Both the position numbers and the translations under genes were made by a program. The notes beneath the pieces were generated by a model. That model ran no database searches and was not told the DNA's origin. It was given only the letters and a program-made list of their open reading frames with translations. A stretch of 63,697 bases of DNA, the filler included, from Octopus bimaculoides (lineage: Eukaryota): NCBI RefSeq assembly GCF_001194135.2. It is 5 parts of 5 records of this genome, joined end to end, with 100 filler letters (N's around TTAATTAATTAA, not from the genome) between each part and the next. Parts side by side here need not be neighbours in the genome. Positions count along the whole stretch, not along the records: positions 20,953 to 30,354 come from NC_069000.1; 4 more parts are not named here. One strand, 5' to 3'. Positions within the stretch are counted from its first letter, which is position 1, and each line of letters opens with the position of its first letter. Shown here piece after piece: positions 8,381-28,117 of the stretch.

Positions 8381-10161
8381 GCAAAAATAATATCCAAGTT
8401 AACATGGATGTCTTGTTTGAATACAGAATGCTGCATTATTAGCCATGAGATATCCTTTCATATACCTACCTGGTGATATCCATTCATATAGCTACTACAC
8501 ACACAGAGCGTAACAAACGAGAATGGTCGGTCATGGTGGCACCGGAATTCTCATATATTATTTCATTCGTCTGGAAAACATCAGTTCGATGCATCCGGTC
8601 ACCGCTTGCCTGACAAATGACGCTACAATGATATACCGAGCCTCAGCATCTTTTCAGACAGAATGTGTTTGTTTTTATGACCCAAGCGCCAATGTGAGAG
8701 GATCTCACAAGGCTAATAAAGCAGTATTCGGTGTTCTAATAAGAGAGACATGTCAAAATTGATATGAATAACCTCTTTGTACATTCCGTTATCCTCGTTA
8801 AGAATTAATTTTTAACAAGCTTACTGGTTATTTGCGACATCAGTGCTCTCTCACATAGAAGGGTCTCATTTAAACTAATTTCTTAAAAAAAGCGGCTAGT
8901 ATGAATCTGTTTCTACACTAAATGTCAACTCTGCGCACCAGAGCCAAAGCTGCATACCTACCATGTGAAATCTCAAACATAAAGAGCAGATACAGTGAAA
9001 CAAATGGAAAATTGCCAACATCAAGCGGCGCCTCAAAAATGTAGCATGCAATATTGCGTTAAGTATGCACTATCAATTTATAAACTTAACAAAAACTATT
9101 TCAGTGTCTTTTTTCAAGCTTGCAACTGCGTATCATATTTTCTAAGTATTATAAACAATCCTCCAAATAATCCCACTAACATCGAGGAAAACCGGATGGA
9201 ATCTGTAGTTATCATTGAATTAATTTAATGGGACTAATCTATCACATAAGATGAATTGTTCTGTTTGAGATCGTTAACATTCGTTCACTGAGAAATTGCT
9301 ATTTCTGAACCGGCGTACTTAATTGGAAATTGGTTTTTAATTGTAAAATATGTCACATATCAGATTAGTGCTTCTCGGTTAAAATTAATCTTCATTTAGC
9401 TTCTTAATAAGAGTATTTATTTCCCACACGGTTTTAGTTTCCAGTTTATTCTCATAAAGAAATAATGTTCGTTTGACATGAGCTTGTGGTTCAATAAGTT
9501 GTATCGGCGGTTAAAAATCCCCGCATGAACAAAATATATTTTTATGATGTACAAACAAAACTTTCACTAATGTAAAAATGAGTGTACGTAGCATTTTATC
9601 AGTCCTTGCTTATATTGATTGAAACTAATGTAATGTTGGGAAAGTTTAACCTATGTGTATGTGTAAGTGTGTATGTGTGTATATGGTAAATAGAGAACGC
9701 AGAGTTGAAACGTTATCAGAACTGTAGCAGTTGCACTAATAAATGAAAATGATAAGAAGATAAGAGGAAAATATATAAGGAAATTCACTGCGATAGTAAG
9801 TATACAGTTATATATTTTGGGTGGCACACATACAAGTTTATATGCATTACAAAAATTGAAGCAGGGAAACTGTTTCATCGAACAAGACATCACATTCTGA
9901 TTTTTCATATGCCTATCAATCTAGATTATATTTCAAGTAACAGAATATTTGAATGTTGCCACAAAGCAGAACTGTTTCGGTACACATTAATTTCTGAATT
10001 GATAAAATGATGCATTCGTTCAAATTTACCATTAGAAAAATCTTTTATATGACAGATCATAGATACGTCTATATATTAATGTGATCTTGCATGAGTCAAT
10101 ACATGCATATGCATAAGGTATCGCTTATAATAAAAATAATAATAATAATATTGATAATAAC

Positions 10162-20952: not shown

Positions 20953-21223
20953 ATATGGGTGTTTAGCTCAACATCCTGAAACAAACCTTATTCAGGGACC
21001 TTTTGAGCGGGATGGGCTACTCAACCTGAAGAAAATTCTAACTGGGCCCCATCTGCGAGGTCATGCGCTGTTTATCTTGATATGAGATCACCATGTCGCG
21101 CACATATGGTTGTGATGCATGTGCCTGGTGTACCCTAATCAGACGGGTAGTCATGATGGGTATACTGGGCTTCGTATATTTTATCCCAGTGTCACTTTGA
21201 TGGCATGCACTGCTCTCTCACTC

Positions 21224-21276
<53 letters not shown>
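20953..21276 (+). mobile_element. Probable 3' end of an (AAT)n-tailed retroelement
   Basis: Non-coding GC-balanced block ending ...gcactgctctctcactc followed directly by a perfect (AAT)n tract; truncated by the gap on the left. Confidence 0.5.
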
Positions 21277-21277
<1 letters not shown>

Positions 21278-21384
21278 CAACTACTACTATTATGATAGTA
21301 CAGGAATCTGAAGTCCAACTACCACCCTTACCACTACCCCAACCCCTGCTACTGATGCTGCTGTTGCTGCAACCACTGCTGCTG

Positions 21385-21454
<70 letters not shown>

Positions 21455-21489
21455 ACCCAAAGACGATAATACCAGTGATATCAGTGAAG

Positions 21490-24400
21490 ATAATAATAAT
21501 AGTAATGAAAGGAAACGGGTGGAGTCTCCTTTTGGGTTCATAATGATACATCTTGTGATGGTGTCACAATAAAAACACTGGTAAATGCGCAACCTGATAA
21601 TCGCTACCTCATATGAGTGACAATGAAAAAAACAAAATATTGTGAATAACGGTGGTAATGAAACTGAAGCCAATAACGGTGACAGTGTTACGCCCTGTAG
21701 GCTCAGAGATTCTGACCCGGCTCCAGCCTGTCCATATCCAGAAAGGGACCACCACACGCGGCGTAGATGGAGCAAACAAATTAATGCTGTGGTCATGGAG
21801 TGTTACTACCTGAGCAACCCGGTAGATGAAAATGGTGCTCAAATTAGGGGTTACCGACAACGTATGTATGATCATTGGAGAGAAAAAGGATTGTTTCAAC
21901 TCACGGAACAGAGACTATGTGATCAAGCTAGAGCAATAAGAAAAAAATGTTGGTTCACAAAACTAGAGCTCGAAGCTATCAAAAGACGGGTCATAGAAAA
22001 TAGCAGCAGAGATAACAATGAAAAGACAGTTCTTACTAATAAGAGTAATCTCATAGCACAGGAAAGGAGCAGTGGTAGTTTACTTGATGTGAGACATATA
22101 GATGATCTAAAAGAAGACGATAAAACTAATAGCGACATGACAAATAAACAAAAGGCAATCTAAGACAGAATAAAGGTAAGACTACAGGAGAACGATAGCG
22201 ACATTATTTGCAATCTTAAAATGGTTGATCGATAAAAATTGAACCAAGAAACCAAAAATGTCAATGAAATTCTGAAATACATCAGAACAAACAACATCAC
22301 AGAAATAAATAATTTGATCAAGACAGCAAGTATTGTTGTAGCAGAAGACATGGGTGTTGATGTCAAGAAAAAGAAACATAATGTGAGTGACAAATTAAAA
22401 GATCCATGGTGGAAAAGAAGAATCCAGGCGGGGTTAGACATACTCTCGAAGGAAATCTCTGTGTGAGACCGAAAAGAAAAAGGGGAGCTTAAAAGCGAAC
22501 AAAAATACAGGGCGCTGAAAAGGAAGTATAATATTGAAAGAAAGGGACTCAAAGTAGTAGTGGAGGAACTGAAACAGCGCCTCATTGCAAAGAAAGCAAA
22601 GATGGTAAGATACGACCAAATAATGAAGGGTTAGCAGCAGAATAGGTTATTCAGAGTAGATTAGAAGAGATTCTATAAATAAATGGAGAGTGTACAGATG
22701 AAAAGTTGATACCAGATAACATTGAAAGTCAAAGGTTTTGGAGTGACATCTAGAGCAAAGACAAGGAGCACAAGAAGGATGCTGAATGGTTGCAAGAACT
22801 GAAACAAACAGTAGTCTGTCCAAAACAGGCAGAACTAGTTATTTCAGTTTGGGAAGTGAAGGAAATCAGCAAAACAATGAGCAACTGGAAGGCCCCGGGA
22901 CCAGATGGAGTTCAAGGCTACTGGATCAAAAGATGTGGTGAATGTCATGCACGAATAGCTGCGCTATTCAACACCTTCTTAAATGCCGACCAAGCAACAC
23001 CAGAGTGGTTGACATTGGGTAGGACAGTGCTGTGCCTGAAAAACATCGAAAAAGGCAATACGGTAGACAATATCCTGCTTGCCACTTACATGGAAGTTAT
23101 TGACTGGAATATTCGCAGAGTCAATGTACGAACATCTGCTACATGAGCAGAAGGGTTGTAAGCGTAAGTGCAAAGGTACCAAGGATCGACTTCTGATAGA
23201 TAAAACTGTGCTCAGAGACTGCAAGAGGAGGAAAAGTAACTTAGCCATGTCATTGACTGACTATCGTAAGGCTTACGATATGATCCCACATTCTTGGATT
23301 ATGGAGTGCATAAACCTGTTTGGGATTGCATCGAATGTTGAGCGATTGATTGGAAAAAATATGGCGAATTGGAGAACGGACCTGACAGCTTACGGAAGAA
23401 GTTTAGGGACAGTAGAAATTAGAAGGGGCATCTTCCAGGGGAACTGCCTGTTCCCACTGATCTTTGTACTGTGCTTGATACCACTAATACTGATTCTGAG
23501 GAAAGCAAAAGCTGGGTATGTATTCAAAAGCCGCCAAAAAAAAAAGTCAACCATTTGTTACTCATGGATGACTTCAAACTTTATGGTAAAGATGAAGCCC
23601 AAGTCAGTTCCCTCGTTGATATGGTGTATACCTTCAGTGCTGATATCAGAATGGAGTTTGAACTGAGAAAGTGTGGTGTGTTAGTATTGAAGAGAGGCAA
23701 AATCAAATGTATGGACGGACTAACGATACCGTCGGGGGAGGTTATGAAGCGGATAGAAGAGACGGGCTATAAGTACTTGGGGAATTTGGAAATGGATAAA
23801 TTAATAGAGAAGGAAATGACAGAAAAATTTAAGGTGGAGTACTTACGCAGACTGAGACTGATCTTAAGTCGAAATTAAACGGACGGAATAAGATCGAAGC
23901 TATCAACACCTGGGAAGTTTCACTCCTTAGATATGGAGCAGGGGTAATGGCATGGACAGTAGACGAACTAAACAGCTTAGATAGAAAGACAAGGAAGTTG
24001 CTAACTAGATATAGGTCACTCCACCCAAAACGTGACACAGACACACTGTATGTACCAAGAAAAAGAGGGGGAGGAGGACTTATTGTATGCGAATATAGCA
24101 TTAGGGCAGAAGAAAACAACATAGTATGGTATGTAAAAAATGCTACAGAACCGCTATTATTAGAAGTAAGAAGGTCAGGCTTGTGTAGGATAAAAGATTG
24201 CAAAGATAAAGCACTATACACGAAATTGAGAACGAATGAAGCTGAAAATAGGTGGGTAAAGAAAAGAATGCATGGTCAATTTCATAGGAATGTTGAAGAT
24301 ATGACAGACAGAGAAAAAAGATGGCTGTGGATGACAAAAAATGATTTAAAACTGGAAACGGAGGTTCTAATCTGTGCTGCCCAAGAGCAAGCACTAAGAA

Positions 24401-25085
24401 CAAACTACATAAAATACAGAATAGATAACATCAGAAAGTGATAAGTGCAGAATCTGTGGACAAAACGGTGAAACCGTATGGCATATTACCAGCAAATGCA
24501 CGCCACTAGTCCAGAAGGAATATAAGAGAAGCCACGACAATATACCCAGGTTTGTCCATTGGACACTTTGCAACAAGTATATACTTGACAGAGCAAAAAA
24601 TTGGTACGACCACAAACCTGAAGGCATCGTCGAAAATAGAATTGCAAAGATCCTATGGGATTTTATGATTCAGTGCGAGCATGAGATAGAGAATAGGAAG
24701 CCGGTCATAGTCTTAATTGAGAAAGAAAACAAACTATGTTGGATTATAGACATAGCATGCTCAGCTGACAAGGTATGCGATAAGGAAGAAAGAAAAGTCG
24801 AGAGATATGACAAGTTAGCTTGGGAAGTTAAGCAGTTGTGGTCGATGAAAAAGATAGCAGGAGTACCAATAATTGTCGGAGTCCTGGGAACAGTGAGCAA
24901 AAATCTCGAGAAGTACTTGGAACAAATAGGATGGGAGAGCACTTGCAGAAATCAGCACTGCTTGGAACCGCTCGAATACTCCAGAAGCTGCTCGAAAAAT
25001 AAGAGGTGTTACTTTAGTTCACTGGTAGTGAACAGCTCCAGCTGACACTGTAGTACACTTCGAGCGTTAGAAGCTATGGAAAGGC
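21490..25085 (+). mobile_element. Near full-length R4/Dong-clade non-LTR retrotransposon (RT + CCHC + RLE), multiple stops and frameshifts
   Basis: N-terminal RRRWSKQINAVVMECYYLS...GYRQRMYDHW...EQRLCDQARAI; [47 protein letters not shown]; CRICGQNGETVWHITSKC; RLE KILWDFMIQ.EHEIENRKPVIVLIEK...IIDIAC. Flanked by trinucleotide microsatellites. Confidence 0.92.
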
Positions 25086-25112
25086 AATACTACTACTACT
25101 ACAACAACAACA

Positions 25113-25156
<44 letters not shown>

Positions 25157-25232
25157 CACTACTACTACTGCTGCTGCTGCTGCTACTACTACNNNNNNNN
25201 NNAATAATAATAATAATAATAACAACAACAAC

Positions 25233-25294
<62 letters not shown>

Positions 25295-25305
25295 TGATGA
25301 TGATA
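25086..25305. repeat. Compound (CTA)/(CAA)/(CTG)/(AAT)n tail
   Basis: Direct reading; immediately 3' of the R4/Dong element. Confidence 0.9.
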
Positions 25306-25757
25306 TGAGAAAATAGAGAGGAAATTAAGAAAATATTATTCTTTCTTGTTTTCATAAAACTAAATTTGTATTTTCTAAATATGAATAAAATATTATATAG
25401 CTATTTTTATTCCCATTACAAGCATGCATGTTTAAATCATATAACTTACTCACCCATTTCCCTTACTACTTCATGGTAAACCCTTCTTAAAGGTTCCCAT
25501 TTATATTTATTTATTACCATCTATATATAATCGAAATATTAATATTTCTAAATCTCTGTAATGGAGACTACGGCAGCAGTACTGGATATTAATAGTTCAC
25601 TTCAAGCTAACATGGCAGTCCAAGAAAATAGGACGAATGCTACCATTGATTAGCTCCAAGAGGCCATTGCCTCTTGCTAGCTATGTGACACACAAACCTG
25701 TGTCCATTATAACCTTTGAACAGGGGAGGTCAGCAGCTTCTCCTTGCTGGTTTGACA

Positions 25758-25801
25758 TCCACAGACTAGTTTCGTGGGTATTTGCCACTTATCAATGTGG
25801 A
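25758..25801 (-). ncRNA. Type I hammerhead ribozyme (U3-A8 core variant)
   Basis: Minus strand TCCACA-TTGATAA-GTGG-CAAATAC-CCAC-GAAAC-TA-GTC^-TGTGGA: stem I, core, stem II, GAAA, short palindromic stem III (ACTAGT), GUC cleavage triplet. Stem I extends via TGCTGG/CCAGCA. Confidence 0.8.
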
Positions 25802-26040
25802 GTAGCCGAACCCAGCAATTTGTTTATTATAGGCATAAAGCCTGAAAAAAGATAGGACACCACAAGGGCAGACAACACAAAACGTAGGGTACATAGAGCG
25901 TATCGTATGAAATACGAATATAAATAAAAGAATGAAAAATGCAATGGCTTACCCCCTCCCCAAAGCAAGCAGTTCCATTTTACTGTTCTAGTTAATCATA
26001 ATTTCATCAGTCTTTTTATACACTCCTACATAACCCGCAC

Positions 26041-27061
26041 TTATTCCAACAAATCGACGAACAATACCACGTTCAGCAATGAATCATACTGGAAATACAA
26101 TTCTGTTAGTTTCATTTCCGCACCAAACAGTTCCCGCAGATTTAATGCTCTTTCTCTCTCATCGCTGTGAAATAAATCTTCATCCGATTTTACTCTTGTT
26201 AAATTTTTTACTTTTGCGATCTTTTTTTCAATCTCTACATTCTTCTTATAAATTACCATCGTTCTTATATTCTGTCCTGTCGGTTTCTTTCTATTCCACA
26301 TGTGCGTTATTTTTTGATTTACCCTCTCCTTCCACTTCTTATATCTTTCTTTTTCACTCCTACTTGTCGGCTCCGGTTCCGGGGTTCGAATTGCACTCTC
26401 TTCCACTTTCTCTTGTGTTTTCGCTGCCTTTCTTTCTTTCTTTTTTTTTTGGACTTTTTGGCGGTGAATTCGCTCTTGTCCTTCTCTTGTTTGCCACTGT
26501 TTCTTCTTATCTTCCTCCACCACTGCTATTTCCATCTCTGCCTGGTTTTTCTCTAATTCATCTTGTTTATGGGGACACTTTGCCTGCATGTGTCCCCTAG
26601 AGGTCTTCCCTCCAGCAAGATCCTCATCGGAGAATACTAACTCCTTTACTATTTTATGCAAGTCTCGTAGGGTTATATAAACCACGACTTCTAATGGGTA
26701 ACCCCACCAATTAATCTCATTAGACTTCTCCACCTTAATTACTTCTGCTTCCTTTTCACAGTTATAGAGGATAGCTGCCACTAGCCATGCCTCGTCTATT
26801 TCCGGGGGCACTCTCCTTATCCTGACTCTTGCGGCTCGTTTTCCGTAGTAAGTTGGCAAGAGTGCCCACTTGGTCGTTCTCAAAGGCACCGTGGAGTGTC
26901 TTTTTGCTTCTTCTTCATTCACGAAACGCACCTCCACTGTGCCGTATTTCTTCCCTCTGGCGTAGAAAGTGATCACTTCTTTAACTTCCGCATACATTCC
27001 TCTATGGCTTCAATTTCTGCTACAACCGCACGTTTGGTTTCAACGTTCAATGTACGATACA
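26041..27061 (-). CDS. Gag/ORF1p-like nucleic-acid-binding protein (Tx1/L1-ORF1-like); N-terminus lies in the gap, probable frameshift near 26990
   Basis: 318-aa ORF: RRM-like GTVEVRFVNEEEAK and RVRIRRVPPEIDEAWL segments, half zinc knuckle GHMQAKCP (CxxC missing), K/E-rich coil. The upstream frame VYRTLNVETKRAVVAEIEAIEEC continues into the N gap. Confidence 0.6.
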
Positions 27062-28117
27062 CNNNNNNNNNNNNNNNNNNNNNNNNNNNNNNNNNNNNNN
27101 NNNNNNNNNNNNNNNNNNNNNNNNNNNNNNNNNNNNNNNNNNNNNNNNNNNNNNNNNNNNNNNNNNNNNNNNNNNNNNNNNNNNNNNNNNNNNNNNNNNN
27201 NNNNNNNNNNNNNNNNNNNNNNNNNNNNNNNNNNNNNNNNNNNNNNNNNNNNNNNNNNNNNNNNNNNNNNNNNNNNNNNNNNNNNNNNNNNNNNNNNNNN
27301 NNNNNNNNNNNNNNNNNNNNNNNNNNNNNNNNNNNNNNNNNNNNNNNNNNNNNNNNNNNNNNNNNNNNNNNNNNNNNNNNNNNNNNNNNNNNNNNNNNNN
27401 NNNNNNNNNNNNNNNNNNNNNNNNNNNNNNNNNNNNNNNNNNNNNNNNNNNNNNNNNNNNNNNNNNNNNNNNNNNNNNNNNNNNNNNNNNNNNNNNNNNN
27501 NNNNNNNNNNNNNNNNNNNNNNNNNNNNNNNNNNNNNNNNNNNNNNNNNNNNNNNNNNNNNNCTGCCAGCTTCCATATCTTCACCCAAAAATGGGGAAGA
27601 AAGAAGCAAATTCAATAATAATTAACAATTTTCAAATTCCAACAATAACAATTTCAAAAATCCAATTTCAACACTCACCGCTCGCAGTCAACAACGCTAT
27701 CTCAAACCAAATCAACGTAGCCGAACCCAGCAAGCGTCGCTGCTGACCGTCTGTTCGAAAGTTTATTTACTTATATTCAGTAGAATACATCCACTCGTTT
27801 TCAAAAATCGAAATATTAATATTTCTAAATCTCTCTAAAGGAGACAACGGCAGCGGTACTGGATATTAATAGTTAACGCCAAGCTAACATGGCAGTCCAG
27901 GAAAATAGGACGAGTGCTGGGTTCGGCTACTCCACATTGATTATACTATGTATACTGTATATGTTGCACCTATCTCATAATACGTTAACTTTATTGTTCC
28001 ATTATTATATTTATTAATTACAATGTGGATTTGTCTATTCATAACTAAATACTTACAACTAATCTTTTCATTGTTTTCAAACAAAATTTGGTCCTATCTC
28101 CACCTATNNNNNNNNNN

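What the first reader, a model, noticed from the sequence alone, without database searches (positions are those of the whole stretch)
25529..27941. Gag/ORF1-only element with a hammerhead ribozyme and permuted terminal repeats (a candidate coding retrozyme)
Seen, reading the minus strand: X-A (27941-27806), then an X' copy (27732-27717), a leader, one 318+ aa ORF, AATAAA, X' + hammerhead (25817-25758), about 110 bp, then degenerate X-A (25650-25529). X/X' form a perfect 27-bp inverted repeat, and X' is also the 5' arm of the ribozyme's extended stem I. No RT, endonuclease, integrase, recombinase or transposase is visible. Established: hammerheads in pseudo-LTRs, tandem redundancy and inverted 5' pLTRs characterise Penelope-like elements and animal retrozymes, whereas RRM + zinc-knuckle ORF1 proteins characterise L1/Tx1 LINEs. 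Inference: a non-autonomous hybrid that self-cleaves or circularises its RNA, encodes only an RNA-binding protein, and borrows RT in trans. I do not know of such a family, but I cannot search. About 500 nt of the 5' ORF is hidden in an N gap.
Basis: partly seen in the sequence, partly recalled or inferred. Interest (0 to 1): 0.8.

Follow-up and report, generated by a model that had tools for sequence, protein, structure and literature searches.

The report
LINE fragment inside a hammerhead repeat
What looked like a new protein-coding, self-cleaving mobile element is most likely two ordinary octopus repeats nested in each other: an old LINE copy that kept only its first gene, inserted into a small hammerhead-ribozyme repeat.

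Summary
The hammerhead is a good motif match, with helices of 6, 4 and 2 bp and a palindromic helix III. Its core carries the U3-A8 pair, a natural variant documented in Penelope-like elements. About 0.0004 such matches are expected by chance in this piece, but Rfam finds no hammerhead.

The ORF belongs to the ORF1 family of L1/Tx1-type LINEs. In O. vulgaris and O. sinensis, homologous ORF1s are followed directly by an endonuclease/reverse-transcriptase ORF2. The window copy has the LINE 5'UTR, a broken ORF1 and the LINE 3' end, but no ORF2. ORF1 has a frameshift near 26988-26979, has lost its zinc-knuckle cysteines, and contains the N gap.

This LINE block lies exactly between two direct copies of the same 23-28 nt, which is the pattern of a target-site duplication. 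Removing the block restores a unit of about 376 nt with 43.5% GC. In that unit, the sequence 5' of the insert pairs with the sequence 3' of the ribozyme cleavage site. It looks like 1.4 units of a metazoan retrozyme-type repeat.

Best reading: an ORF2-less (HAL1-like) LINE copy nested in a hammerhead repeat. It is not shown to be a hybrid "coding retrozyme". Genome-wide copy counts could not be made.

The parts
27915..27941 (-). X: perfect 27-nt complement of the hammerhead's 5' arm plus the first 5 core bases. It marks the start of hammerhead-repeat unit 1, which is 5'-truncated.
   Evidence: I3
27806..27918 (-). A, copy 1 (113 nt), part of hammerhead-repeat unit 1. Contains a 16-nt palindrome at 27810-27825.
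   Evidence: D5 and I25; 92% identical to 25529-25641
27734..27805 (-). Segment of 72 nt whose 3' half is the 5' strand of an extended helix I. It pairs with 25744-25690, on the far side of the ORF block.
   Evidence: duplex -36.2 kcal/mol against -20.3 +/- 4.0 for 500 shuffles (minimum -35.6). The sequence directly 5' of the intact X' gives only -20.2. One search gives the matching blastn hit.
27711..27733 (-). 5' copy of the duplicated target, TTGCTGGGTTCGGCTAC-GTTGAT. Compared with the 3' copy, TCCACA is replaced by a single G (5 nt shorter).
   Evidence: I8, 51
27577..27710 (-). LINE 5'UTR (leader)
   Evidence: local alignment of 27712-27640 to the L004 LINE 5'UTR (9767-9833) scores 42, against shuffles of 26.7 +/- 3.8 (maximum 41). 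Weak similarity to L001 and L002 leaders.
27563..27576 (-). Likely ORF1 start, ATG GAA GCT GGC AG (MEAG), running into the N gap
   Evidence: Relatives start ME.. (P0015, P0035) or MSGMEET (P0010). This is an inference.
27063..27562 (.). Assembly gap inside ORF1. The length is nominal. Relatives have 55-165 residues between the start codon and the YRT motif.
26973..27062 (-). ORF1 coiled-coil segment in a second frame (VYRTLNVETKRAVVAEIEAIEECMRKLKK*). The frameshift to the main ORF lies near 26988-26979.
26041..26997 (-). Main ORF1 frame, 318 aa: alpha/beta domain, degenerate zinc knuckle, K/E-rich helices and a conserved C-terminal motif
25819..26040 (-). LINE 3'UTR, with the family's terminal motif GCCCTTGTGG at 25869-25860 and AATAAA at 25828-25823. 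No ORF2 lies between the ORF1 stop and this 3' end.
   Evidence: against the L003 LINE 3'UTR, score 43 versus 23.5 +/- 3.8, z 5.2; the motif occurs only at LINE 3' ends in 62 kb; no ORF2 remnant.
25791..25818 (-). 3' copy of the duplicated target (X', 28 nt). It is also the 5' strand of helix I and core bases U3-U7 of the hammerhead.
25758..25801 (-). Type I hammerhead motif with a U3-A8 core. The predicted cleavage site is between 25764 and 25763.
   Evidence: The U3-A8 variant and the helix sizes match PMC4209133. Rfam is negative.
25651..25763 (-). 3' arm of the extended helix I (25763-25690) and a structured spacer
25529..25650 (-). Degenerate X plus A, copy 2: the start of the next hammerhead-repeat unit. 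The repeat ends at 25529.
   Evidence: D5; alignment

Best explanation
Two known kinds of repeat are nested here.

(1) The host is about 1.4 tandem units of a small repeat that carries a hammerhead. Each unit is about 376 nt with 43.5% GC, in the order: 3' arm, spacer, X, A, 72 nt, X', core. Its RNA would fold either into a type I hammerhead with a long helix I, or into a rod in which X masks X' and part of the core. That is the design of metazoan non-LTR retrozymes.

(2) A LINE-derived block was inserted into the ribozyme between core bases U7 and A8, presumably by target-primed reverse transcription. The block is 27710-25819: 5'UTR, ORF1 and 3'UTR of an L1/Tx1-type LINE, with no ORF2. The insertion duplicated 28 nt of the target (X'). 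Because the duplication restores the 5' half of the ribozyme, the hammerhead 3' of the insert is still complete.

The LINE copy is non-autonomous, like mammalian HAL1, and would have needed ORF2 protein supplied in trans. It is now decayed: it has a frameshift and has lost its zinc-knuckle cysteines.

Shown: the repeats, the motif, the ORF1 homology to ORF1+ORF2 LINEs, the LINE ends, the duplication and the split pairing.

Inferred: the order of events, the insertion mechanism, and ribozyme activity.
For: ORF1 family and its link to ORF2:
- 414 relatives at E<=0.001 among 1.84 billion cluster representatives.
- The named relatives that I looked up are all from Octopus species.
- L004 (O. vulgaris) has an ORF1 of 503 aa overlapping an ORF2 of 1132 aa that hits Exo_endo_phos, RVT_1 and zf-RVT.
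- L003 (O. sinensis) has an ORF1 of 615 aa followed by broken APE, RT and zf-RVT pieces.
- The window ORF matches both ORF1s at E 1e-21 to 1e-25.

The block has LINE ends:
- 3'UTR homology to L003 up to AATAAACAA, z 5.2.
- The motif GCCC(C)TTGTGG occurs only at the four LINE 3' ends in 62 kb, where 0.18 hits are expected by chance.
- 5'UTR homology to L004 starts 3 nt after the duplicated segment, z about 4.
- There is no ORF2 remnant.

Duplication: 27733-27711 and 25818-25791 directly flank the block.

Split structure: the 72-nt segment 5' of the block pairs with the sequence 3' of the cleavage site at -36.2 kcal/mol, beyond all 500 shuffles. The LINE 3'UTR end does not pair (-20.2).

Empty-site join: a unit of about 370-376 nt, GC 43.5%, circular fold z = -8. 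This matches the size, GC content and self-pairing described for metazoan retrozymes (PMC7229834).

Hammerhead: one hit where 0.0004 are expected. The 6/4/1-2 bp helices with a palindromic loop, and the natural U3-A8 variant, are described in PMC4209133.
Against: - No other genomic copy of the hammerhead repeat or of this LINE subfamily could be retrieved. It is therefore not shown that the repeat exists without the insert, or that the composite is single-copy.
- Rfam models do not recognise the hammerhead, and activity is untested.
- The 5' copy of the duplication differs from the 3' copy: TCCACA is replaced by G.
- A 500-N scaffold gap lies inside the block, so the link between the two halves rests on the assembly.
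- The 5'UTR homology is modest.
- No outer target-site duplication of the hammerhead repeat could be seen in the AT-rich flanks.
- The LINE end has no A-tail, only AATAAACAAA(T). The same is true of the related L003 and L004 elements.
Confidence: 0.72

Rival explanations
1. The whole 2.3-kb stretch is one mobile, non-autonomous unit, a 'coding retrozyme'. It arose once by such an insertion and then spread as a unit, using the hammerhead to process its RNA and a foreign RT to copy it.
For: The [X-A] repeats flank the ORF block in direct orientation, as expected for a copy of slightly more than unit length. The hammerhead is intact 54 nt beyond the LINE 3' end. Long-range pairing could close the coding block into a stem.
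Against: There is only one hammerhead, so no unit-length RNA can be excised here. The block has complete LINE ends of its own and is bracketed by a duplication that looks like a target-site duplication. The host unit is complete and of retrozyme size without the block. No second copy is known.
Confidence: 0.08
2. Scaffolding artefact. The contig left of the 500-N gap (hammerhead repeat plus LINE 5' end) and the contig right of it (ORF1 body, 3' end, hammerhead) come from different copies of these repeats and were joined wrongly.
For: The gap lies inside a repeated element. There are two further 10-N gaps in the piece. The two copies of the duplication are not identical.
Against: Strand, order and content on both sides fit one ORF1. 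The two flanks fit together into one coherent ribozyme unit, including pairing across the join.
Confidence: 0.07
3. Chimeric retrocopy made in one event. Reverse transcription started on a hammerhead-repeat RNA, switched to a LINE ORF1 RNA, then switched back to a hammerhead-repeat RNA at the X' microhomology.
For: The three blocks are collinear on one strand, and X' sits at both switch points. L1-type enzymes are known to make template-switch chimeras (from memory, not tested).
Against: It needs two switches at the same 28 nt. It also needs the two repeat parts to join into exactly one continuous unit. No outer target-site duplication was found.
Confidence: 0.05
4. A derivative of a Penelope-like element. 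The hammerhead repeats are pseudo-LTRs, with an inverted 5' fragment, and the internal RT/GIY-YIG ORF was replaced by a captured LINE ORF1.
For: Hammerheads (including the U3-A8 variant), pseudo-LTRs and inverted 5' copies are features of Penelope-like elements (PMC4209133, PMC8557442). A Penelope-like element with a zinc-knuckle ORF1 is on record (Chlamys-2_cBra).
Against: There is no Penelope-like RT or GIY-YIG anywhere in the piece. X is not an insertion-specific inverted fragment, because a degenerate X again precedes A in the second unit. The two 'LTRs' are permuted, not collinear. The helix sizes are those of canonical type I ribozymes, which PMC7229834 assigns to retrozymes, not the minimal form typical of Penelope-like elements.
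Confidence: 0.05
5. A non-autonomous DNA transposon bounded by the perfect 27-bp inverted repeats (27941-27915 and 25817-25791). In this reading the hammerhead is a chance look-alike spanning its end.
For: 27/27 complementarity (I3). TAA is found on both outer sides if the repeat is read as 26 bp.
Against: There is no transposase. A 3-bp match in AT-rich DNA is weak evidence. The model does not explain the second X-A unit, the direct X' copy, the pairing across the block or the 0.0004 chance expectation for the ribozyme motif.
Confidence: 0.03

Closest known systems
Metazoan non-LTR retrozymes: tandem repeats of about 170-400 nt carrying type I hammerheads (Cervera & de la Pena 2020, PMC7229834)
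   Same: Unit size of about 376 nt, low GC (43.5%), a type I hammerhead with 6-bp helix I, 4-bp helix II and a short palindromic helix III, tandem arrangement, and a strongly self-paired predicted RNA.
   Different: Only 1.4 units and one ribozyme are seen. The core is U3-A8. Genomic copy number, circular RNA and self-cleavage are all untested. The unit is interrupted by a LINE fragment.
Hammerheads of Penelope-like elements (Cervera & De la Pena 2014, PMC4209133)
   Same: The natural U3-A8 covariation in the core. A helix III too short for a monomer, which suggests action as a dimer. Association with retroelement repeats.
   Different: There is no Penelope-like RT/GIY-YIG here. Helices I and II have the canonical sizes, not the minimal-ribozyme layout.
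HAL1 ('half-L1') of mammals, a non-autonomous L1 derivative that encodes only ORF1p (PMC5753468, citing Smit 1999 and Bao & Jurka 2010)
   Same: A LINE 5' end, ORF1 and a LINE 3' end, without ORF2. It would depend on ORF2 protein supplied in trans.
   Different: This is a cephalopod Tx1/L1-type LINE with a type I-like ORF1. Only one decayed copy is known, so a propagating ORF2-less family is not shown.
L1/Tx1-group LINEs with type I ORF1 (RRM plus CCHC; Khazina & Weichenrieder classes as summarised in PMC5203782)
   Same: The ORF1 family has a coiled coil, an alpha/beta domain and a CCHC knuckle. Full-length relatives carry APE, RT and zf-RVT (L003, L004). The L003 copy sits in an (ATT)n array, which recalls the target preference of Tx1-group elements (the comparison is from memory).
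   Different: No RT phylogeny was made, so the clade is not assigned. The alpha/beta domain matches no Pfam RRM model and no solved RRM at a significant level.

Membership tests
Hammerhead ribozyme, type I | Conserved core CUGANGA ... GAAA ... UH, with three helices around it | tested here: met
   UUGAUAA / GAAA / UC with helices of 6, 4 and 2 bp. C3-G8 is replaced by the covarying U3-A8, a variant found in thousands of natural motifs (PMC4209133). Chance expectation is 0.0004 per piece.
Hammerhead ribozyme, type I | Recognised by the curated covariance models (Rfam hammerhead families) | tested here: not met
   No hammerhead hit at E<=1 on the piece or at E<=10 on 121 nt.
Hammerhead ribozyme, type I | Self-cleavage at the predicted site | not testable with these tools
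   Needs in vitro transcription of 25830-25690, as a monomer and as a dimer.
Metazoan non-LTR retrozyme | Tandem repeats of 150-450 bp, each with a type I hammerhead, and GC below 50% | tested here: inconclusive
   After removing the insert, 1.4 units of about 376 nt remain, with GC 43.5%. Only one hammerhead is present, because the first unit is 5'-truncated.
Metazoan non-LTR retrozyme | Many genomic copies, expressed as linear and circular RNA of unit length | not testable with these tools
   No octopus genome or transcriptome could be searched by DNA. Pattern scans of the available collections found nothing.
Penelope-like element | An ORF with a telomerase-like RT, usually with a GIY-YIG endonuclease | tested here: not met
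   The only ORF inside the repeats is a LINE ORF1. The only RT in the piece is LINE-type and on the other strand.
Penelope-like element | Collinear direct pseudo-LTRs that carry the hammerhead | tested here: not met
   The two end modules are circular permutations of each other (X-A-72-X' against X'-core-spacer-X-A), and only the 3' one has a ribozyme.
L1/Tx1-type LINE (ORF1 of) | ORF1 homologous to the ORF1 of elements that also encode an APE + RT ORF2 | tested here: met
   tblastn E 1e-21 to 1e-25 against L003 and L004. Their ORF2s hit Exo_endo_phos, RVT_1 and zf-RVT.
L1/Tx1-type LINE (ORF1 of) | Type I ORF1 layout: RRM plus CCHC zinc knuckle | tested here: inconclusive
   Five of the 48 family members scanned hit zf-CCHC. 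The window copy keeps only RGHMQAKCP. The alpha/beta domain is ferredoxin-like in the model, but its best structural match has E 0.037 and is not an RRM.
L1/Tx1-type LINE (autonomous copy) | ORF2 present downstream of ORF1 | tested here: not met
   Only 222 nt lie between the ORF1 stop and the LINE 3' end, and there is no APE or RT similarity on this strand.
HAL1-like ORF1-only LINE derivative | LINE 5' end, ORF1 and LINE 3' end, without ORF2 | tested here: met
HAL1-like ORF1-only LINE derivative | A family of copies sharing the same ORF2 deletion, which would be proof that the deleted form transposes | not testable with these tools
   Only this copy is available. L002 also shows no ORF2 within 550 nt of its ORF1, but its tail has no significant LINE 3'UTR homology.
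   One hammerhead only. The 5' X' copy is followed by the LINE leader, not by a core.

The most novel reading that the evidence does not exclude
After the LINE fragment landed in the ribozyme, the composite became a mobile unit of its own. It would be a 2.3-kb protein-coding relative of retrozymes, whose RNA is trimmed by the hammerhead 54 nt beyond the LINE 3' end and copied by a LINE or Penelope-like RT in trans. A milder variant is that this LINE subfamily targets the hammerhead repeat specifically, in the way Tx1-group LINEs target particular repeats.
Probability: 0.08. Interest if true: 0.75.

Novelty: new member of a known kind. Interest (0 to 1): 0.3.

Why it matters
As it stands, this is a worked example of how nested repeats can imitate a new hybrid element. 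A target-site duplication that happens to restore half of a ribozyme produces 'permuted terminal repeats' around a gene.

Two smaller points are worth keeping. First, octopus genomes appear to hold retrozyme-type hammerhead repeats with the U3-A8 core. The two retrozyme/octopus papers my search listed were not opened, so whether this is already described for cephalopods is unchecked. Second, an octopus L1/Tx1-type LINE has given rise to at least one ORF2-less, HAL1-like copy.

If genome-wide searches showed the composite to be multicopy, it would be the first protein-coding retrozyme-like element. The evidence here points the other way.

Tried and rejected
Searches that found nothing:
- Exact-protein look-ups for the window ORF and for two incidental ORFs over the ribozyme and the leader, and for P0001, P0015 and P0035.
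- A protein search with the incidental 72-aa ORF across the hammerhead, intended to fish out other DNA copies.
- The third protein search, with a 48-sequence profile. It was swamped by low-complexity candidates and returned only 7 hits.
- Pattern scans of the metagenome and viral collections for the A block and X'.
- ARAGORN found no tRNA-like SINE head.

Comparisons that were uninformative:
- L001 and L002 (Logan contigs with distant ORF1 relatives) show no significant DNA similarity to the window's end modules. The L002 tail has no significant LINE 3'UTR homology.
- Rfam finds no family in the four related loci.
- The Pfam and PDB sequence searches give only zinc-knuckle hits for the family.
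- The fold search of the ORF model gives only weak ferredoxin-like matches.

Readings rejected:
- The TIR-transposon reading and the reading of X as an inverted 5' pseudo-LTR. A degenerate X is an internal part of the second repeat unit, and the X/X' pairing is explained by the RNA rod.
- A possible hammerhead at the LINE-LINE junctions of L004 (CUGAUAA...GAAAC). I inspected it by eye and rejected it because there is no helix II.
Full report
**What is in the sequence.**
- The 113-nt block A occurs twice, at 27918-27806 and 25641-25529, 92% identical (D5).
- The 27 nt at 27941-27915 (X) are a perfect complement of 25817-25791 (X') (I3).
- A third, direct, partial X' lies at 27733-27717, followed by GTTGAT (I8, 51).
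- AATAAA is at 25828-25823.
- The piece has three N runs: 25193-25202, 27063-27562 and 28108-28117.

**The hammerhead.** Rfam finds no hammerhead, neither on the whole piece at E<=1 nor on 121 nt around the motif at E<=10. Read by hand, 25801-25758 nevertheless fits a type I hammerhead.
- Helix I is UCCACA/UGUGGA. The core is UUGAUAA.
- Helix II is GUGG/CCAC with a 7-nt loop, followed by GAAA.
- Helix III is A-U and C-G closed by UA, followed by the C after which cleavage would occur (25764|25763).
- The MFE and centroid folds show the long helix I, and the centroid also shows helix II.
- The only departures from the consensus are U3 and A8 in place of C3 and G8, two positions that pair with each other.
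- Cervera & De la Pena (PMC4209133) describe exactly this U3-A8 covariation in about 1,300 motifs of Schistosoma.
- The same paper gives the usual metazoan layout as helix I 6 bp, helix II 4 bp and helix III 1-2 bp with a small palindromic loop. That is what is seen here, and ACUAGU is palindromic.
- A descriptor of my own that allows either core finds this one site in the piece.
- With helix I >=6 and helix II >=4, it finds 7 sites in 363 Mb of composition-matched random sequence, none palindromic. That is about 0.0004 expected per piece.

I therefore accept the motif as a real hammerhead-type element. Its activity is untested.

**The ORF and the gap.**
- The 318-aa ORF (26997-26041) is closed by stop codons just 5' of its ATG.
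- The stretch from the gap edge to 26976 is open in another frame (VYRTLNVETKRAVVAEIEAIEECMRKLKK*).
- The closest relative, O. bimaculoides protein P0010, matches both pieces as one protein. Residues 67-93 match 27059-26979, and residues 91-155 match 26988-26794 at 74% identity. The copy therefore has a frameshift near 26988-26979.
- On the far side of the gap, an ATG at 27576 (MEAG...) follows a leader. Relatives begin ME.. or MSGMEET and have 55-165 residues before the YRT motif.
- The gap thus lies inside ORF1. The frame across it cannot be judged, because its length is only nominal. It cannot hide an RT.
- The zinc knuckle is degenerate: RGHMQAKCP is left, and the two N-terminal cysteines are gone.
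- Pfam has no model for the main domain.
- An AlphaFold model (mean pLDDT 72, above 85 over residues 21-120) shows a beta-alpha-beta sandwich followed by long helices.
- Its best PDB matches are ACT-, dodecin- and S6-like folds at E>=0.037, with no RRM among the 50 matches shown. 'RRM' is therefore plausible but not shown.

**What the ORF belongs to.**
- A profile of the domain finds 414 proteins at E<=0.001 among 1.84 billion cluster representatives. Most are short fragments.
- The named relatives that I looked up are all from Octopus species.
- Two of them could be placed on chromosomes.
- L004 (O. vulgaris OX597840.1) carries three head-to-tail copies, 99% identical, with a period of 5,284 bp. 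Each copy has an ORF1 of 503 aa (coiled coil, the same domain, an intact CCHC and the same C-terminal motif). It overlaps an ORF2 of 1,132 aa that hits Exo_endo_phos, RVT_1 and zf-RVT.
- L003 (O. sinensis CM016872.1) has an ORF1 of 615 aa followed by broken APE, RT and zf-RVT pieces. It sits in an (ATT)n array.

The protein is therefore the ORF1 of an APE-type LINE of the L1/Tx1 kind. The type I ORF1 layout is as summarised in PMC5203782.

**The window copy has LINE ends but no ORF2.**
- Only 222 nt separate the ORF1 stop from X', and nothing on this strand resembles APE or RT.
- The last 120 nt or so of that stretch align with the end of the L003 3'UTR, right up to AATAAACAA. The score is 43, against 23.5 +/- 3.8 for shuffles (z 5.2). 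The L003-L004 control gives z 4.6.
- The motif GCCC(C)TTGTGG occurs four times in the 62 kb held, always on the LINE sense strand within 50 nt of the terminal AATAAA. The window site is 25869-25860. By chance 0.18 hits are expected.
- At the other end, 27712-27640 aligns with the L004 5'UTR (score 42 against 26.7 +/- 3.8; maximum 41). The alignment starts 3 nt after the partial X'.

The block 27710-25819 is thus a LINE with both ends and ORF1, lacking about 3.4 kb of ORF2. This is the layout of mammalian HAL1 (PMC5753468).

**How the two elements relate.**
- The LINE block is bracketed by direct copies of the same sequence. The 5' copy is TTGCTGGGTTCGGCTAC-GTTGAT (27733-27711). The 3' copy is TTGCTGGGTTCGGCTACTCCACATTGAT (25818-25791).
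- The 72 nt just 5' of the first copy pair with the 55 nt 3' of the ribozyme cleavage site. The duplex is -36.2 kcal/mol, against -20.3 +/- 4.0 for 500 shuffles (minimum -35.6).
- The LINE 3'UTR end that now sits next to the ribozyme gives only -20.2 (blastn trace).
- The ribozyme's extended helix I is therefore split by the LINE block.
- Joining the two flanks gives a continuous repeat in the order X, A, 72 nt, X', core, 3' arm, spacer, X, A. That is 1.4 units of about 376 nt, with GC 43.5%.
- Folded as a circle, the unit has an energy 8 sd below shuffles, mainly through the X/X' stem. My first join dropped 6 nt, which does not change the result.
- Size, GC content, tandem order, ribozyme type and self-pairing are those given for metazoan non-LTR retrozymes (PMC7229834).
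- A degenerate X again precedes A in the second unit. X is therefore an internal part of the repeat, not an inverted fragment made at insertion.

**Most likely history and mechanism.** A retrozyme-type hammerhead repeat was present first. An ORF2-less LINE RNA was then inserted into it, between U7 and A8 of the ribozyme core. The insertion was presumably made by target-primed reverse transcription with ORF2 protein from an autonomous relative, and it duplicated 28 nt. The duplication rebuilt the 5' half of the ribozyme on the 3' side, so one complete hammerhead remains. Both elements then decayed: the A copies differ by 8%, one duplicate is 5 nt shorter (TCCACA replaced by G), ORF1 has a frameshift, and the knuckle is lost. 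The order of events, the enzyme and the ribozyme's activity are inferences.

**Rivals.** Nothing here supports that, and the locus has one ribozyme, not two. A scaffold mis-join, a one-step template-switch chimera, a Penelope-like derivative and a TIR transposon were each considered. They are less likely for the reasons listed under the rival explanations.

**Limits.** No tool gave DNA-level access to an octopus genome. The decisive count could therefore not be made: uninterrupted hammerhead units, LINE copies of this subfamily, and copies sharing the junctions.

**Verdict.** The arrangement is best explained by ordinary nesting of two known kinds of retroelement. Interest is modest. It rests on a cephalopod retrozyme-type repeat with a U3-A8 hammerhead, and on a HAL1-like LINE copy.

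Noticed in passing
window 21642-25045 (+): A decayed LINE-type reverse transcriptase (RVT_1 hits) broken into at least six reading frames. Its C-terminal motif looks like a restriction-like endonuclease, though Pfam is silent on it. It lies on the strand opposite to the finding and is unrelated to the finding's ORF1.
   Followed up: partly
window 21223-21455 and 25087-25295: (AAT)n and (TAC)n microsatellite arrays bracket the plus-strand LINE in mirrored order. The Rfam Afu_254 hit at 21270-21416 (E 0.025) is an artefact of this array.
   Followed up: partly
L004 4445-19184 (O. vulgaris OX597840.1): Three head-to-tail copies of a full-length LINE, 99.1-99.7% identical, with a period of 5,284 bp. 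They are joined as ...AAAACACTGATAA|GGACGTTAC..., with no target-site duplication or A-tail between them. A run of 27-30 A lies inside the 5'UTR about 30 nt before the ORF1 start. How such arrays form is unexplained.
   Followed up: partly
L003 9724-9777 and 15347-15370 (O. sinensis CM016872.1): The related LINE (intact ORF1, broken ORF2) has (ATT)n on both sides. This suggests insertion into, or preference for, this microsatellite, as known for some Tx1-group LINEs.
   Followed up: no
window 25869-25860; L003 15322; L004 9684 and 14962: A conserved motif GCCC(C)TTGTGG lies shortly before the terminal AATAAA of all four LINE 3' ends and nowhere else in 62 kb. It could be the 3' recognition element of this LINE group.
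   Followed up: partly
window 25533-25548 and 27810-27825: A perfect 16-nt palindrome, GAAATATTAATATTTC, sits near the 3' end of both A copies of the hammerhead repeat.
   Followed up: no
P0046 and P0090 (O. bimaculoides P0046; source of P0090 not looked up): Gene models fuse an ORF1 fragment of this LINE family to WD40-repeat or LDL-receptor class A domains. These are probably annotation chimeras caused by unmasked repeats.
   Followed up: no
L002 300-700 (-): Upstream of the decayed ORF1 copy lies a fragment whose translation looks like the C-terminal part of a mariner-type transposase. This was judged by eye only.
   Followed up: no
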